From Vitrella brassicaformis CCMP3155 (lineage: Eukaryota > Protista > Chromerida): 64,000 nucleotides of DNA. The translations under genes and the position numbers were made by a program. The stretch is taken from positions 124,001 through 188,000 of the forward strand of contig CDMY01000295.1 in the NCBI GenBank assembly GCA_001179505.1, read 5' to 3'. The notes beneath the pieces were generated by a model. The model searched no databases, was not told the DNA's origin, and saw nothing but the letters and a program-made list of their open reading frames with translations. Positions 34,316 to 57,100 of the stretch are shown in pieces; position 1 is the first letter of the stretch; every line of letters begins with the position of its first letter.

Positions 34316-37300
34316 TCATGGTGCGTATGGCGGCGGATCAGGGAGTCTTGGATGGGCAGGTGCTGGGGGTGGTGGGGGCGGGGGCGGCGGTGGGGCTGGT
34401 GGGGGGATGTCATTGTGCGGCAGCCCCGCCGTCGACGAAGACGCCAGGTGCACCAATTCGCGGTAGTCAAGCGCCTGTGTCCACCATGCGACACGGCACA
34501 CAAACACGTACATGATCACACGTGTGTTGGTGTGTGTGTGTGTGGGGGGGAGTCGATCGCACTTGAGGGTCAGCGAGGTTGAGGAATGGGTTGACGGGGT
34601 CTAGTATGAGTGGCTGCTGCCGCATGAGGGGCCACCAGATGTCGCTGTCGCTGTAGTGAGACGTCCAGATGATACGCAGGGAGGCGAAACGACTCATCAG
34701 ACACAGCAGAGTGCTCAAGGCCTGCATCCACCCACCCACCCACCCACACAAGCCACGCCACGCCGATGCCGCCATGCGATGCGGTCAGTGTGTGGTGTGT
34801 GGTGTATGGATTAGCTACCGTCTGTTGGTCCTTGAGTTGCTTTGCCTGCTGGTGCACGTAGATGGCCAGCAGCTCAAGCAGGTAGTCGCTCGGGCGGCTG
34901 TACACATTGCTCCAAACCTGCCATTCTCAGCCCCCAGTCAGCACACAACACACACGACATCCATCCATCCATCCATGCATCCATCGTGACATCCGACCCA
35001 CCTGTTGGTTCCTCCAATGCTTGATCAGCCGTATGGTCACGCGCACAGGCGCCGGCTGGCGGGACACATACTCACACTGACATACAGACACGCACACACA
35101 CACAGACAGAGATGAACGAACGAACGCATGACGACGTGTGTCACGGTCTTGCTTACTCTGTAAGGCGTCACAGCCGCGTCGAGGTACTCCCTGACGCGGG
35201 GCGGCGACTCGCCCAGGCACTGCATGAGCTCGCCGTAGGTCTCAAACACGGGGGCGGCCTTCAGCGACACCGACAACATGCCCTTGTACTGACAACCAGG
35301 CACACACAACATGGCGGCGTGGCTGCTTTGTGTGTATGTGTGTGTGCGTGTTGGTGGGGGGTGGGTGGATTGCCTACGGTGAAGGTGACGGCGTTTGGGA
35401 GTATATAGAGGTCAGTGACGTGTTCGGGTGGCAGCAGCATCGTCACCATGCGACCCAACACGCGACACAGCGGGGGGTACCTGTACTCACACACACAGCA
35501 AGAGACTTGCAAGGTGGCGGTGTTATGCGATGGCCGACGGACTGACCGACCATGTGTCGAAGTTCTTGGTGGGCAGCCCCTCGGTGTTCAGGATGATGTC
35601 ACACTCCACAGGCTGCCCGCTCACCGCAGTGCCCTGCGCCCATGCAGCCAGACAGACAGACAGACAGATGGTATGTGGCTCTTTCCTGAGTGCGTGAATG
35701 TGGTCCCTCCCTCCCTCAGTGACATGGCTGACATACGTTGTTAGCCGCCCCGCCTTTGCTGATGCTCTCCAAATTCAAACACGAATCGGACTCAAACACC
35801 TGCATCGCATCCCCCAAAAGCCGCACACATGAATACCATGCCATCTGGCTTCCCACACGCGTACCTCCACGAGGGCCTTGACGTCCTGCGCCACCCTCGA
35901 GTTGAACGCCCGCGATGATATCTTAAGATGCAGCTCGCTGTACACCCCCTCAGCCACCTTGACCTCACCCACCCGCCGCACACGGGACGCACCAGCCACT
36001 GGCACAGCAACCGGCTGCTGCTGTGGCTGCTGCACCGGTCGCCACCACGTGACCGTGACGTCACGTGGATACTGCTGGTGCTGGTGCTGGTGTGTGGGTG
36101 TGGATGTGGGTGTCGTCGATGTGTGGGTGTGGGGTCGGTGGGGCTGTTGGTCGAGAGAGGGGAACGGTGCTGGTTGGTCGGGGACGCCTTGTGTGTGTGT
36201 TGGCGTGGGGACGGCGAAGTCGTCGGCCTGTGACAGTGAGGGCTTCTGGGTATGCGGATGCGGCAGGACACTGATCGACGAGCTGGAGCTGGCCTCCGAC
36301 AACGCTGCAACAAGAAGAAAGGAAGGCAAACAAACACCGAACATAGTCCTCCTGTGGCTGCATGCCTGTCCCGTGCAATCCACTACCTGGTGCCTGTCCG
36401 TCTCCATCACGTTGCTCCCCATCGGCCGCCATGGTCCTGACGGTCTCCTCCGCCCCGCCCGGCTGACCCGCACTCTGACACATCAACGCCTCATCCACCT
36501 CGCAATCGAAACACGAAGATCCATCCGTCGACCGCGAGTGACTCGACGGCGTGGGGTGGCTGGATGGGGGTGCGGCGTCTGCTCTTGAGGTGGTGGTCAT
36601 GTGTGGCGATGGAAGTGACGGGGCTGTGGGAGTGGCCGACACTGTCGTCTGTGTCGGTGTGTGGGTGCGTGTGGAGGGCTCTGCAGGGGCGGGAGGTTCT
36701 TCGCTGACATCACATAGGTCGGCGTATTTCTTGAGCGCCACGCGGCCGTTCCTGTCCAGCACGAAGGTGTCGGCGGTCCGCGACAAGAACACGTCAGGCC
36801 TGCCACACATCCACAGATATCAATATGGGTGCTCTCTCTCTCTCTCTCTCTGTGGAGGTGGGTGTGTGGGTTGGTAGCTGACCTTCCTCCGATGAGCGTC
36901 GACACGGCAACGTGGTGCTCCTCGATGAATCGGCCGCACAGCGCCGTGAGGTCCATCCGATAGACACACTGGTCCTTAGCCATCTCGGCCAGGTACCGCT
37001 CCAGCTCCTTGCGCACAATCCGCTCCTCCTCGGGTGTCAGCTGGCACGACACATCACCATCCTCACCACCGCCACCATTGACATCCGACTCTGACTCACT
37101 CGCCAACCACACCTGCACACACACATACAAGAAGGATGTCACACCACAACCACGCACATGCACTGCATACCGTGTTGTTGACGAGCCTCAGCTCGTCCCG
37201 CGATCTGATGAACTCCCCAAACCCATACTCGCTCCCCACCAGCCGCAGCGCCTCCTCGACGGTCGAGCCATACCGATAGCAAAACAGCAACGACAGCTCG

Positions 37301-37790
37301 TCCATCTGCAGGCCGTCGCCGACACACGAAGTCGCCCGCTGATGGTGGTGCAAAAGGTCGCGGAGCATGTGCGCGACGGTCGTGTCGGTGGCCGTGACGA
37401 CCATCTCCATGTGTGTGCCATCGGTGAGCTTGGCCGTGTCGGGGAGGGGCTGGGGATGAGGGTGGTCGGGCGATGAGGGGAGGGGGCACATGTCATACTG
37501 GTCGATGGGGAAGGGGTAGCGGAAGAGAAACAGCACACGCTCCTTCAGCGCATACACCTGAATGAAGCCAGACAGACAGACAGACAGACAAGCAGGCGAG
37601 CAACACACTCTGTGGGTGGGGTGGTCTGATTATTTTTCTGTTTGGGTGGATGAATGAATGCATCAGGCATCATTGGAGTGTGGTGCCCACTGACCGTTTC
37701 TGTGGAGCCGATGCGCACCTCCTGGTCCCTCACCACCGGCTTTGCACCCACACCCGGCCGCACACTCACAAACACGGTGATGAGGCTCAT
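34316..37790 (-). CDS. 2'-5' oligoadenylate synthetase (OAS)-fold protein: UBL - 2x LOTUS/wHTH-like - low complexity - OAS NTase - OAS1_C - poly-Pro; 13 exons, 812 aa
   Basis: Exons 37790-37695, 37557-37171, 37112-36883, 36799-36387, 36304-35865, 35799-35737, 35633-35551, 35480-35378, 35288-35157, 35076-35002, 34917-34819, 34721-34563, 34474-34316. All are GT-AG, phase-consistent and stop-free (2439 nt). Motifs [66 protein letters not shown]. Confidence 0.88.
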
Positions 37791-38192
37791 CCCACCCACC
37801 CGCTCCGCCGAATCCGCCCGCCCGCCGCTTCTTAATGCCTATGCTGTGTCACCGTCGTCACTTGTCATGGGGGATAAGCCGTCCGTGGTTGGCGAGAGGG
37901 AAGCCGAAACGGTAAGTGAGATACGATGGTCTGGAAGGAGAGAGAGGACCAGAGGTGGTAAGGTAAGAGGGAGTGAGATGCGACAGACACACACGGGCCC
38001 ACGCAAGAAGCCGATGCACGCGAAATGAGCGATGAAACGGATGCACCCGATCGCCGGTGGTGTTTTCGGCGGGTGTAGGGAGTTGACGGCTGATCTGGCT
38101 ACGAGAGGGGCGCCTGGGTCTGTTGCTGTCGATTGCAAGCACCATCACTCATCCCTTCTCTCACCGCAGCCTCTCTTCCCGCTGCCTCAGCC

Positions 38193-55780: not shown

Positions 55781-56048
55781 CATCCACACACACACACACA
55801 CACAGTGATACCAAGACACGTCCCTCGCCCACTCGCTGACCATTTGGTGGTGGTGGCGGTGGCTATGGTGCATGACTTGCCGCCGGCCGTGGCGCTCACC
55901 ACCTCCCATCGATCCAGCTGGTGTTTTTGATGTGCGCAGATCTCGAGTGCCGACATCAGGTACTGTAGGCACCCACATACACATACACATACACCCACAT
56001 CCACACGCACCCCAAGGGCGCTGTGTGTCTGGTCATGTGCAGACTCAC

Positions 56049-57100
56049 TCTGTAAGGTGTGAAGGCCGTATGGATGTACTCCCTCACGCGTGGCGGCGAC
56101 TCGCCCAGGCACGCTGGCCATCCCCATGCCGTGACGGAGACAAAAAAGCCGAAGCCGATACGTCGTCCTTGGCAGCCGCCCAGCCGATGCGCAAAAGCAG
56201 CGACTGCAGCCACGGCCTCGCGCTCGATTGCAGCATCATACTTGGTGAGGTCGTTGAATGTGATGAAGAGGGAGAAGATGTCCTGCTGGCGAAGCCCTTC
56301 TCGGCTGCAGCCCCGGCTGGGCCCTACTCGGCCGCCCTGAGTAATGTCTCGGTCGAATATAAAATGTAGGCAGGGATATTGCCTACAAAGATATCACACA
56401 AGCCCCAGATATCACGCTGTCTGATGGCTGCATCATAGTCATCTCTCGTGCTTACGTTGCCGGAGGCGGGAAAAACAGGTCGACGTCTCGCGAATGCTGC
56501 GTTGCCATGGTGCTGTGTGCTGCCCTCTTTCTGCTTTCTATCTCTTCTGACTGCTCTTTTTCTGTCTTTTTTCTCTGAGGCAGCCGACGTTGATGGTGAC
56601 GAGAGGGCTCCCATTTTCCCAGCTCCTCACTGTCCCATCTGGTGACACACCGCACAGACACACACACACACACACACGCGGAGAGAGAGAGAGAGAGAGA
56701 GAGAGACATGGAGGGTTCCCTGGTGATCACGATGGGGTCATATTCAACTATCTCCCAACTCACCGCAGTGCCCTGCACCCATGCAGCCAGCCAGCCAGAC
56801 AGGCAAATGGTATGTGGCTCGTTCCTGTGTGCGTGTGGTCCATTCCCTCCCTTACTGGCGTGGGGACGGTGACGTCGTCGGCCTGTGACGGTGAGGGCTT
56901 CTGGATATGCGGCTGCGGCAGGACACTGATCGACGAGCTGGAGCTGGCCTCCGACAACGTTGCGACAAGGAGGAAGGCAAACAAACACCGAACATAGCCC
57001 TCCTGTGGCTGCACGCCTCTCCCGTGCAATCCATTACCTGGTGCCTGCCTGTTCTTGTGGCGGGAGAAGCGCCGCCACGTCATCATTGCCTCAGCCATGC
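56049..57100 (-). pseudogene. Deleted/degenerate second copy of the OAS-like gene
   Basis: 56856-57070 matches 36203-36420; 56760-56853 matches 35620-35715 (GTAVS exon and upstream intron); 56049-56113 (CLGESPPRVREYIHTAFTPYR plus donor) matches exon 9. Confidence 0.85.

What the first reader, a model, noticed from the sequence alone, without database searches (positions are those of the whole stretch)
35157..35799. The OAS-like active site is rewired: GA for GS, E-x-D for D-x-D, and Lys at the third acidic position
The P-loop Ser is Ala (KGGA). The first two carboxylates are E-C-D, an E-x-D pattern as in cGAS. The strand matching OAS1 VEFDVLPAF (third Asp, D148) reads VSLKAAPVF. This predicts either a catalytically dead RNA-sensing scaffold, paralleling human OASL, or a different metal usage and product. 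The third-position alignment is by eye.
Basis: partly seen in the sequence, partly recalled or inferred. Interest (0 to 1): 0.7.

Follow-up and report, generated by a model that had tools for sequence, protein, structure and literature searches.

The report
OAS-like protein missing catalytic aspartate
An expressed gene of the alga Vitrella brassicaformis encodes an OAS-fold protein with lysine where the third catalytic aspartate should be; all its sampled protist relatives also lack that aspartate, so it is probably a binding scaffold and not a 2'-5'-oligoadenylate-making enzyme.

Summary
Observation confirmed. Coordinates 35157-35799 (minus strand) hold four exons of a 13-exon gene. Spliced transcript contigs match it without mismatches. 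It encodes the public 812-aa Vitrella brassicaformis protein CEM00520.1/A0A0G4ERP7, already named "OAS1 domain-containing".

Profile-profile alignment to canonical OAS domains (probability 100%, E 1.6e-56) gives these equivalences:
- A540 = OAS1 Ser63
- N543 = Lys66
- E553/D555 = Asp75/Asp77
- K615 = the third catalytic Asp (Asp148)

The domain models confidently (pLDDT 93.7) as an OAS fold, with K615 on strand beta5.

The "rewiring" is not special to this gene. It belongs to a large, uncharacterised family from dinoflagellates, chromerids and a gregarine, built as ubiquitin-like domain + winged helices + OAS-like domain. No sampled member has an acidic residue at the third site. Dinoflagellate-like members conserve the signature S-K-D-E-R-K-D. 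The chromerid and gregarine copies, including two other Vitrella loci, have each lost different active-site residues.

Most likely reading (about 0.55): a non-catalytic, OASL-like RNA- or nucleotide-binding module. A non-canonical chemistry remains possible (about 0.25).

The scan has already reported two other inactive LOTUS-OAS genes elsewhere in this genome. Moderately interesting: a new variant of a known kind.

The parts
37695..37790 (-). Exon 1 (residues 1-32), start of the ubiquitin-like N-terminus
   Evidence: The exon model reproduces P0196 exactly, with GT-AG introns. X1 depth is present at 37693-37800.
37171..37557 (-). Exon 2 (residues 33-161): rest of the ubiquitin-like region and winged-helix/LOTUS-like module 1
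   Evidence: Transcript contig piece 37169-37555. P0196 24-261 aligns collinearly with P0010 19-219, which carries Pfam ubiquitin (37.2 bits).
36883..37112 (-). Exon 3 (residues 162-237): winged-helix/LOTUS-like module 2, first part
   Evidence: Transcript contig piece 36882-37110; BLASTP collinearity with P0010.
36387..36799 (-). Exon 4 (residues 238-375): end of module 2 and start of the Pro/Thr/Ser-rich linker
   Evidence: Transcript contig piece 36387-36798; model check.
35865..36304 (-). Exon 5 (residues 376-522): linker and the N-terminal helices of the OAS-like domain
   Evidence: Transcript contig piece 35863-36304. AF2 helices at 5-15 and 18-38 of P0196:490-790.
35737..35799 (-). Exon 6 (residues 523-543): strand beta1 and the P-loop K-G-G-A-A-N-N. 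A540 (35746-35748) = OAS1 Ser63; N543 (35737-35739) = OAS1 Lys66.
   Evidence: phmmer against 4ig8; hhalign; codon coordinates.
35551..35633 (-). Exon 7 (residues 544-570): strand beta2 with E553 (35604-35606) and D555 (35598-35600), which equal OAS1 Asp75 and Asp77
   Evidence: The distance from E553 to the conserved G-L-P anchor equals that from the first acidic residue in P0010.
35378..35480 (-). Exon 8 (residues 571-605): N-lobe helix and strands beta3 and beta4
   Evidence: Transcript contig piece 35378-35478; AF2 strands 103-108 and 113-117.
35157..35288 (-). Exon 9 (residues 606-649): strand beta5 with S613 and K615 (AAG, 35259-35261) at the position of the third catalytic Asp
   Evidence: Transcript contig piece 35157-35288 with 0 mismatches. 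hhalign pairs K with D. AF2 strand 121-129 contains K126, which is K615.
35002..35076 (-). Exon 10 (residues 650-674): start of OAS1_C. R661 sits where the family has a near-invariant Lys; K668 = OAS1 Lys213.
   Evidence: Pfam OAS1_C on the exon piece and on P0196 642-772, 60.7 bits; column counts.
34819..34917 (-). Exon 11 (residues 675-707): P-S-D-Y-L-L-E-L-L helix. D685 (34885-34887) lies at the position of OAS1 Gln229.
34563..34721 (-). Exon 12 (residues 708-760): OAS1_C core with the I-L-D-P-V-N-P motif
   Evidence: Pfam 25.2 bits on this exon piece alone. It is the only PF10421 hit in the genome's first look. 77 homologues were found with this exon.
34316..34474 (-). Exon 13 (residues 761-812 plus stop): C-terminal helix and a proline-rich tail
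   Evidence: P0001 and P0196 contain the exon 12-13 junction; model check.

Best explanation
The span is the N-lobe of the OAS-fold domain of an expressed 812-aa Vitrella brassicaformis protein. Its architecture is a ubiquitin-like domain, two winged-helix/LOTUS-like modules, a low-complexity linker and the OAS-like domain. The fold is intact, but the site that holds catalytic metal A in OAS1 carries Lys615. The P-loop has also lost the Ser and Lys that hold the donor triphosphate or pyrophosphate in OAS1. Shown here: the residues, their equivalence to OAS1, the fold, expression, and that every sampled member of the family lacks the third carboxylate. Inferred: without that carboxylate the two-metal 2'-5' polymerisation cannot run, as in human OASL, where the third carboxylate is Thr152. 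On this reading the domain acts as a non-catalytic module that binds RNA and perhaps a nucleotide. It would work with the winged helices (RNA or partner binding) and the ubiquitin-like domain (adaptor or signalling): a protist counterpart of OASL-type or NF45/NF90-type pseudo-nucleotidyltransferases.
For: K615 aligns with the third catalytic Asp by profile-profile alignment and lies on beta5 of a confident model (pLDDT 93.7), the strand that carries D147 in porcine OAS1 (PMC13129866). A540 and N543 replace Ser63 and Lys66; Ser63 coordinates the donor triphosphate (PMC4446440), and S62 and K65 contact PPi in porcine OAS1. OASL is inactive 'in part due to' Thr at the third carboxylate (PMC4446440). 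The chromerid and gregarine relatives have each lost different active-site residues: Chromera N-K-S-E-L and N-K-S-D-F, Digyalum A-A-S-D-Y, Vitrella C458 G-G-G / D-A-L / Gln, and Vitrella C973 D-V-S. This is the pattern expected when catalysis is no longer selected. Structural positions conserved across the family are kept and the 13-exon frame is intact and transcribed, so the protein is still in use. The best structural matches are OAS1, OASL, OAS3 domain I and OAS2, followed by CdnC and then the pseudo-enzyme pair NF90/NF45.
Against: E553, D555, K668 (Lys213) and the G-G backbone of the P-loop are kept, which is enough in principle to bind Mg-NTP. In the dinoflagellate-like branch the whole site S-K-D-E-R-K-D is strongly conserved (94 of 118), which argues that the ancestral site does something with a nucleotide. 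No activity, RNA-binding or ligand data exist. The side-chain geometry of K615 could not be measured because the tools give no coordinates.
Confidence: 0.55

Rival explanations
1. It is an active nucleotidyltransferase with non-canonical chemistry. The family uses two carboxylates, a basic residue at the third site (Arg or Lys in place of metal A) and an Asp at the Gln229 position. This would catalyse a one-metal or Lys/Arg-assisted nucleotidyl transfer, such as a different oligonucleotide signal or NMPylation of a protein or RNA end. The Vitrella protein would retain a weakened version of this.
For: In 118 dinoflagellate-like members the counts are Ser 116, first Asp 118, second Glu 110, third site Arg 101 + Lys 12, Lys213-equivalent 116, and Asp at the Gln229 position 115. 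The full signature S-K-D-E-R-K-D is the commonest pattern. Among diverse representatives, those with a basic third residue keep more of the other six sites (5.15 against 4.33, Mann-Whitney p = 0.054, not corrected for relatedness). The window protein keeps E553, D555, K615, K668 and D685.
Against: I know of no NTase-fold enzyme that works with a basic residue at the third carboxylate position (from my own knowledge; no search was made for this). The window protein has also lost the P-loop Ser and Lys and changed the near-invariant Lys (OAS1 K206 position) to Arg. In chromerids the third site is not kept basic: Lys, Leu, Phe, Gln, and Asn in the truncated copy. Conservation of the site is equally consistent with nucleotide binding without turnover, as NF45/NF90 crystallise with ATP, UTP or CTP (entry titles).
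Confidence: 0.25
2. The gene is decaying. The active-site changes are neutral drift in a copy that is transcribed but no longer needed, within a region of recent partial duplications.
For: The window protein sits on a long terminal branch (1.19 against a median of 0.56). Truncated partial copies lie 29 kb upstream of the window and at 56.0-57.0 kb inside it. Exon and intron identity to the upstream copy are nearly equal (91.8% against 90.5%) and dN/dS is 0.55.
Against: The 812-codon frame is intact across 13 exons with canonical splice sites. Spliced transcripts exist. Nearly all structural positions conserved across the family are kept, and the model is confident. The dN/dS value averages over the truncated copy, which is the likelier pseudogene.
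Confidence: 0.12
3. It is a canonical dsRNA-activated 2'-5'-oligoadenylate synthetase in which another acidic residue takes over the third position.
For: The OAS fold and OAS1_C domain are present. The first two carboxylates and Lys213 are kept. Asp685 is an extra acidic residue in the active-site region, at the Gln229 position.
Against: No acidic residue lies on beta5 or in the alternative register (S613, K615, T605). Gln229 contacts pyrophosphate near metal B, not the metal-A site (PMC13129866). The OAS1 RNA-contact residues Arg195 and Lys199 align with Cys and Ser. No RNase L/KEN domain was found in the genome, although that search was uninformative because its control also found nothing.
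Confidence: 0.05

Closest known systems
Human OASL (OAS-like domain, PDB 4xq7)
   Same: It has an OAS fold with an incomplete triad: the third carboxylate is replaced (Thr152 in OASL, Lys615 here). It is fused to ubiquitin-like domains and is thought to act by binding RNA rather than by catalysis (PMC4446440). It is the second-best structural match (TM 0.70).
   Different: It is not an orthologue: the window protein sits in a separate protist clade. The ubiquitin-like domain is N-terminal and single, whereas OASL has two at the C-terminus. The window protein adds two winged-helix/LOTUS-like modules and has a basic rather than neutral residue at the third site. Its P-loop Ser is also lost.
OAS1 (human 4ig8, porcine 1px5/4rwn)
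   Same: The fold is the same (TM 0.69-0.74). The OAS1_C domain, the L-[IV]-K-H-W Lys213 motif, the Y-x-L-E-L-L helix and the I-L-D-P-x-x-P motif are shared, and the first two carboxylates are acidic.
   Different: The residues at the positions of Ser63, Lys66 and Asp148, and of the RNA-contact residues Arg195 and Lys199, are not conserved. Gln229 is Asp. Sequence identity is only 17-20%.
Ubiquitin-like + winged-helix + OAS-like family of dinoflagellates, chromerids and gregarines (uncharacterised: Alexandrium catenella A0A7S1RDR2 cluster, Yihiella, Chromera velia A0A0G4I095 and A0A0G4HS06, Digyalum oweni)
   Same: The architecture is collinear. Identity over the OAS domain is 30-41%. The third site is non-acidic, Asp sits at the Gln229 position, and the conserved structural motifs are shared.
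   Different: The window protein departs from the family signature S-K-D-E-R-K-D at four of seven sites (A-N-E-D-K-K-D). It has Arg at a Lys found in 43 of 44 representatives. It carries a long Pro/Thr/Ser linker and a poly-proline tail.
NF45/NF90 DZF domains (PDB 4at7-4atb)
   Same: They are pseudo-nucleotidyltransferases of the same fold that act as RNA-associated scaffolds, and they were crystallised with ATP, UTP or CTP. They are structural matches at ranks 13-35. Homologues P0010 and P0153 give a weak Pfam DZF_N hit.
   Different: They are much more distant (TM 0.5-0.6) and have no OAS1_C signature. They function as heterodimers, for which there is no evidence here.
cGAS
   Same: The first two carboxylates follow the E-x-D order. 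It is a 2'-specific nucleotidyltransferase of the same superfamily.
   Different: cGAS keeps the third Asp and belongs to the Mab21/cGLR superfamily, not the OAS superfamily (PMC10732462). E-x-D here is a swap from the family's D-x-E and not shared ancestry.

Membership tests
OAS superfamily (OAS1_C, PF10421) | OAS1_C domain scoring above Pfam's gathering threshold | tested here: met
   P0196 residues 642-772 score 60.7 bits against a cut-off of 19.9. Three collinear exon pieces also hit the model.
OAS superfamily (OAS1_C, PF10421) | Two-lobed OAS fold | tested here: met
   The AF2 model has pLDDT 93.7 and pTM 0.90. Foldseek's top matches are OAS1, OASL, OAS3 and OAS2, with TM 0.68-0.74 and E down to 8e-12.
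Catalytically active 2'-5'-oligoadenylate synthetases (OAS1 type) | P-loop G-S with Ser63 holding the donor triphosphate | tested here: not met
   The motif is G-G-A: A540 aligns with Ser63.
Catalytically active 2'-5'-oligoadenylate synthetases (OAS1 type) | First two catalytic carboxylates on beta2 (Asp75, Asp77) | tested here: met
   E553 and D555 align with Asp75 and Asp77. Both are acidic, with the residue types swapped relative to the family's D-x-E.
Catalytically active 2'-5'-oligoadenylate synthetases (OAS1 type) | Third catalytic carboxylate on beta5 (Asp148) | tested here: not met
   K615 aligns with it and lies on beta5 of the model. No acidic residue is at -5 (S613) or at T605 of the alternative register.
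Catalytically active 2'-5'-oligoadenylate synthetases (OAS1 type) | dsRNA-dependent synthesis of 2-5A | not testable with these tools
   This needs an enzyme assay.
OASL-type inactive OAS-like proteins | Incomplete triad at the third position, with the fold retained | tested here: met
   OASL's Thr152 is reported in PMC4446440.
OASL-type inactive OAS-like proteins | Fusion to ubiquitin-like domain(s) | tested here: inconclusive
   Pfam finds no ubiquitin domain in P0196 1-85. However, P0196 24-261 aligns collinearly (E 4e-26) with P0010 19-219, whose residues 7-77 are Pfam ubiquitin at 37.2 bits. The position is N-terminal, unlike OASL.
OASL-type inactive OAS-like proteins | Orthology with vertebrate OASL | tested here: not met
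   In the tree the window protein lies within the protist family, separate from the metazoan OAS domains (SH-aLRT 90).
Protist ubiquitin-like + winged-helix + OAS-like family | Clusters with dinoflagellate and chromerid sequences, and has a non-acidic third site plus Asp at the Gln229 position | tested here: met
   See the tree, the column counts and the architecture comparisons.

The most novel reading that the evidence does not exclude
The conserved S-K-D-E-R-K-D site of the dinoflagellate-like members reads Arg where OAS1 has the third Asp and Asp where OAS1 has Gln229. It may be a working active or ligand site of a new kind, not a dead one. That would mean a one-metal or Arg-assisted nucleotidyl transfer, or a nucleotide-sensing switch, in an abundant protist family that couples an OAS fold to ubiquitin-like and LOTUS-like domains. 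The Vitrella gene would be a partly degenerated offshoot of it.
Probability: 0.2. Interest if true: 0.75.

Novelty: new variant of a known kind. Interest (0 to 1): 0.42.

Why it matters
OAS-type proteins are the commonest cGAS/DncV-like nucleotidyltransferases (CD-NTases) of eukaryotes and are thought to date from early eukaryotes (PMC10732462), but almost nothing is known about what they do outside animals. This case indicates that one large protist branch, abundant in marine metatranscriptomes, lost the canonical third catalytic residue early. In that branch the dinoflagellate-like members keep a strictly conserved altered site, while the chromerid and gregarine members let it decay. Surveys that count "OAS homologues" as evidence of 2-5A immunity in protists should therefore be read with care. 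The dinoflagellate consensus proteins are good candidates for testing whether an OAS fold can work, or sense, without its third aspartate. The Vitrella gene on its own is an ordinary member of that picture.

Tried and rejected
- **Pfam on N-lobe exon pieces.** Stop-free pieces of the N-lobe exons gave nothing useful; only the OAS1_C exons hit.
- **Word-indexed protein search with exons.** This was impossible because of the length filter. I ran the exhaustive search with exon 12 instead. It returned only a 106-aa fragment of the window's protein; the full-length record was reached through its cluster.
- **The look-up of encoding contigs for that fragment.** No record.
- **HMMER family profile against PDB.** It gave another register for the third strand at low posterior probability. 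I rejected it in favour of hhalign, the independent MAFFT placement of the bridging sequences P0060 and P0050, and the strand count of the models.
- **Apparent Lys-to-Asn / Leu-to-Val variant.** DNA contigs of run X3 show it at 35259-35264. It is the sequence of the truncated upstream paralogue, not an allele.
- **RNase L/KEN domain (PF06479).** No hit in the genome, but the control genomes were silent too, so this is uninformative.
- **Literature searches.** Searches for OAS + LOTUS, OAS + dinoflagellate, and OAS + chromerid or Symbiodinium found no description of this family.
- **Side-chain geometry.** I could not examine K615, E553, D555 and D685 in the model because the tools return no coordinates.
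- **Hand-joined spliced model.** Exons were joined only inside a script, to check identity with the public protein P0196.
Full report
**What is there.**
The window is eukaryotic (about 60% G+C, short GT-AG introns). It is G000:C295:124001-188000 of a 72.7-Mb assembly. The finding's span lies on the minus strand inside a 13-exon gene at 34316-37790.

Pfam OAS1_C matches three collinear exon pieces (profile 25-60, 65-113 and 93-152).

Contigs of public runs X1 and X2 are spliced copies of the gene. One 2308-nt contig covers exons 2 to 12 and matches the listed pieces with 0 mismatches, including 35157-35288, which holds the Lys codon.

A search with exon 12 alone found a 106-aa fragment of the protein and 76 homologues. 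The fragment's 90% cluster holds the full-length public record P0196. This is 812 aa, CEM00520.1 / UniRef A0A0G4ERP7, Vitrella brassicaformis CCMP3155, named "2'-5'-oligoadenylate synthetase 1 domain-containing protein".

My exon model has GT-AG at all 12 introns and translates exactly to P0196. The gene is therefore real, expressed and already in the databases. Its OAS1_C domain scores 60.7 bits.

**The observation.**
- K-G-G-A is residues 537-540.
- E-C-D is residues 553-555.
- The Lys in V-S-L-K-A-A-P-V-F is K615 (AAG, 35261-35259).
- phmmer against human OAS1 (4ig8) pairs A540 with Ser63, N543 with Lys66, E553 with Asp75 and D555 with Asp77, with a one-residue insertion in the loop before the strand.
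- Counting back from the conserved G-L-P anchor gives the same assignment in the window protein and in homologue P0010.

For the third site I aligned 37 family domains, with the window protein first (A3), against 14 canonical OAS domains from animals (A2). hhalign gives probability 100% and E 1.6e-56, and it pairs K615 with the Asp of the canonical D-[VI]-L-P-x-[YF] motif. P0010, whose strand reads S-V-S-L-K-F-A-P-V-F, gives the same result.

That Asp is the third member of the triad. Porcine OAS1 reads F-D-V-L-P-A-F and the entry titled L149R mutant reads F-D-V-R-P-A-F, which fixes the Asp as D147. D74, D76 and D147 on beta2, beta2 and beta5 are the metal-binding triad (PMC13129866).

The AlphaFold model of P0196 490-790 is confident (pLDDT 93.7, pTM 0.90). 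It has five N-lobe strands, and K615 (model residue 126) lies on the fifth.

Foldseek's best matches are porcine OAS1 (TM 0.74), the OASL OAS-like domain (0.70), OAS3 domain I, human OAS1 and OAS2. The bacterial CD-NTase CdnC and the NF90/NF45 pair follow.

One dissenting alignment exists. HMMER of the family profile against PDB slid OAS1's beta5 onto the family's beta4, at low posterior probability. In that register the window residue is T605, again not acidic. The -5 position on beta5 (Glu in OAS1) is S613.

**Context changes the meaning.**
The homologues are numerous: 400 passed E <= 1e-5 in the word-indexed search. Most come from mRNA-sized contigs of marine metatranscriptomes and from MMETSP.

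Named members are:
- the dinoflagellates Alexandrium catenella and Yihiella yeosuensis;
- Chromera velia (two proteins);
- the gregarine Digyalum oweni.

Their architecture is Pfam ubiquitin, then one to three Egalitarian-type winged helices (WH_Egal, LOTUS-like), then OAS1_C. The N-terminal 24-261 of the window protein aligns collinearly with that region of P0010 (E 4e-26).

I counted residues at the OAS1-equivalent sites in 44 diverse representatives (50%-identity clusters) and in 118 dinoflagellate-like sequences:

| OAS1 position | 44 diverse representatives | 118 dinoflagellate-like |
|---|---|---|
| Ser63 | Ser 27, Ala 11 | Ser 116 |
| Asp75 | Asp 28 | Asp 118 |
| Asp77 | Glu 30, Asp 7 | Glu 110 |
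| Asp148 | Arg 18, Lys 3, otherwise Phe/Tyr/Leu/His/Ser; no Asp or Glu | Arg 101, Lys 12 |
| Lys213 | Lys 38 | Lys 116 |
| Gln229 | Asp 38 | Asp 115 |

The signature S-K-D-E-R-K-D is the commonest pattern: 94 of 118, and 10 of 44.

So a non-acidic, usually basic, third residue is the state of the whole family and not an innovation of this gene. Specific to the Vitrella protein or its lineage are:
- Ser to Ala;
- Gly-Lys to Asn-Asn in the P-loop;
- the D-x-E to E-x-D swap;
- Arg at a position that is Lys in 43 of 44 representatives.

**Pattern across lineages.**
In a maximum-likelihood tree the family separates from animal OAS domains (SH-aLRT 90). Inside it, the window protein, the Chromera pair and the dinoflagellate-like clade form an unresolved trio, and the Vitrella branch is long (1.19 against a median of 0.56).

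The chromerid and gregarine members have each lost different residues:
- Chromera: N-K-S-E-L-K-D and N-K-S-D-F-K-D.
- Digyalum: A-A-S-D-Y-H-D.
- Two further Vitrella loci found with the family profile read G-G-G / D-A-L / Gln (C458) and G-G-S / D-V-S (C973).

Earlier reports of this scan had already called two other Vitrella LOTUS-OAS genes inactive. They are probably these loci, though I did not match coordinates.

Independent, different losses in one lineage indicate relaxed selection on catalysis. The near-perfect conservation in the dinoflagellate-like clade points the other way: in that clade the altered site is used for something.

**How it most likely works.**
In OAS1 the third Asp holds metal A. 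Ser63/S62 and Lys65/66 hold the donor triphosphate or pyrophosphate, together with Lys212/213 and Gln229 (PMC4446440, PMC13129866). Human OASL is inactive in part because its third carboxylate is Thr152.

The Vitrella domain lacks the third carboxylate, the P-loop Ser and the P-loop Lys. I therefore read it as a non-catalytic OAS-fold module (confidence 0.55). It would contribute RNA binding, and perhaps nucleotide binding, to a protein whose other parts are winged helices and a ubiquitin-like domain. In function it would be a protist analogue of OASL or of the NF45/NF90 pseudo-enzymes.

What is shown: the residues, the alignment, the fold, expression and the family pattern. What is inferred: loss of activity and the scaffold role.

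The main rival (0.25) is a non-canonical chemistry or nucleotide-sensing function inherited from the conserved S-K-D-E-R-K-D site. The window protein still has both beta2 carboxylates, Lys668 and Asp685. Asp685 sits where Gln229 contacts pyrophosphate near metal B, so it is unlikely simply to replace the metal-A ligand (inference).

A decaying gene (0.12) and a canonical synthetase (0.05) are less likely, for the reasons given under the rival explanations.

**Surroundings.**
The same contig carries truncated copies.
- One lies 29 kb upstream of the window's start. It covers residues 190-650, is 89% identical in DNA, and reads K-S-G-A, E-Y-D and Asn at the third site. It lacks the OAS1_C exons.
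- It is followed by a second partial copy (residues 70-427).
- A small fragment lies at 56013-56957 in the window.

Exon and intron identity to the upstream copy are 91.8% and 90.5%, and dN/dS is 0.55. Divergence is patchy, which suggests gene conversion. The apparent Lys-to-Asn variant in DNA contigs of run X3 is this paralogue's sequence.

**Limits.**
- The RNase L search was uninformative.
- Most family members come from unnamed metatranscriptome contigs, so "dinoflagellate-like" rests on two named clusters and the tree.
- No hand-joined spliced sequence was sent to any search or folding tool. The public record P0196 was used instead.

**Verdict.**
The case is a new variant of a known kind (an OASL-like pseudo-OAS with a new architecture, in a family that lacks the third Asp throughout). 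Interest is moderate and lies mainly in the family-level pattern.

Noticed in passing
G000:C295:93493-97132 (L003) and 84000-93999 (L006), about 27-31 kb before the window's start: There are two tandem partial copies of the gene. One covers residues 190-650, reads K-S-G-A, E-Y-D and Asn at the third site, and has no OAS1_C exons. The next covers residues 70-427. Exon identity to the window gene is 91.8% and intron identity 90.5%; dN/dS is 0.55. Divergence is patchy (exon 7 plus the intron after it about 79%; exon 8 plus the intron after it about 97%), which suggests gene conversion.
   Followed up: partly
window 56013-56957 (-): A small fragment of the same gene family covers residues 388-411 and 629-660. 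It resembles the truncated upstream copy more than the intact gene.
   Followed up: partly
G000:C458:42171-43422 (-) (L008, L009, L016) and G000:C973:119879-121114 (+) (L010, L014, L015): Two more OAS-like loci exist in the same genome, with differently degenerate sites: G-G-G / D-A-L / Gln at the third position, and G-G-S / D-V-S. The C973 match contains one TAG, which may be an intron boundary. They are probably the LOTUS-OAS genes this scan reported earlier.
   Followed up: partly
window 34885-34887 (-), D685; family-wide: The position of OAS1 Gln229, a pyrophosphate contact, is Asp in 38 of 44 diverse and 115 of 118 dinoflagellate-like family members. With Arg or Lys at the third site this looks like a charge swap across the active-site cleft. 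Its meaning is unknown.
   Followed up: partly
window 35041-35043 (-), R661: A Lys that is near-invariant in the family (43 of 44 representatives and 118 of 118 dinoflagellate-like; OAS1 K206 position) is Arg only in the window protein.
   Followed up: no
window 36319-36628: DNA contigs of runs X3 and X5 at this stretch carry 8 differences from the window, at about twice the depth of neighbouring contigs, while the RNA contigs match the window exactly. They probably derive from the upstream paralogue, or collapse it with the window copy.
   Followed up: no
window 34316-34721 (-); protein P0001: An MMETSP ORF of 106 aa (Transcript_5337, marked complete) is Met followed by exons 12-13. The genome's exon 11/12 junction encodes Thr-Ala-Leu, not Met-Ala-Leu, so the origin of that Met (another isoform or an artefact) is unexplained.
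   Followed up: no
window 34316-34420 (-): The last exon ends in a proline-rich tail containing a run of ten consecutive prolines. The dinoflagellate homologues lack it and end in a conserved F-F-W.
   Followed up: no
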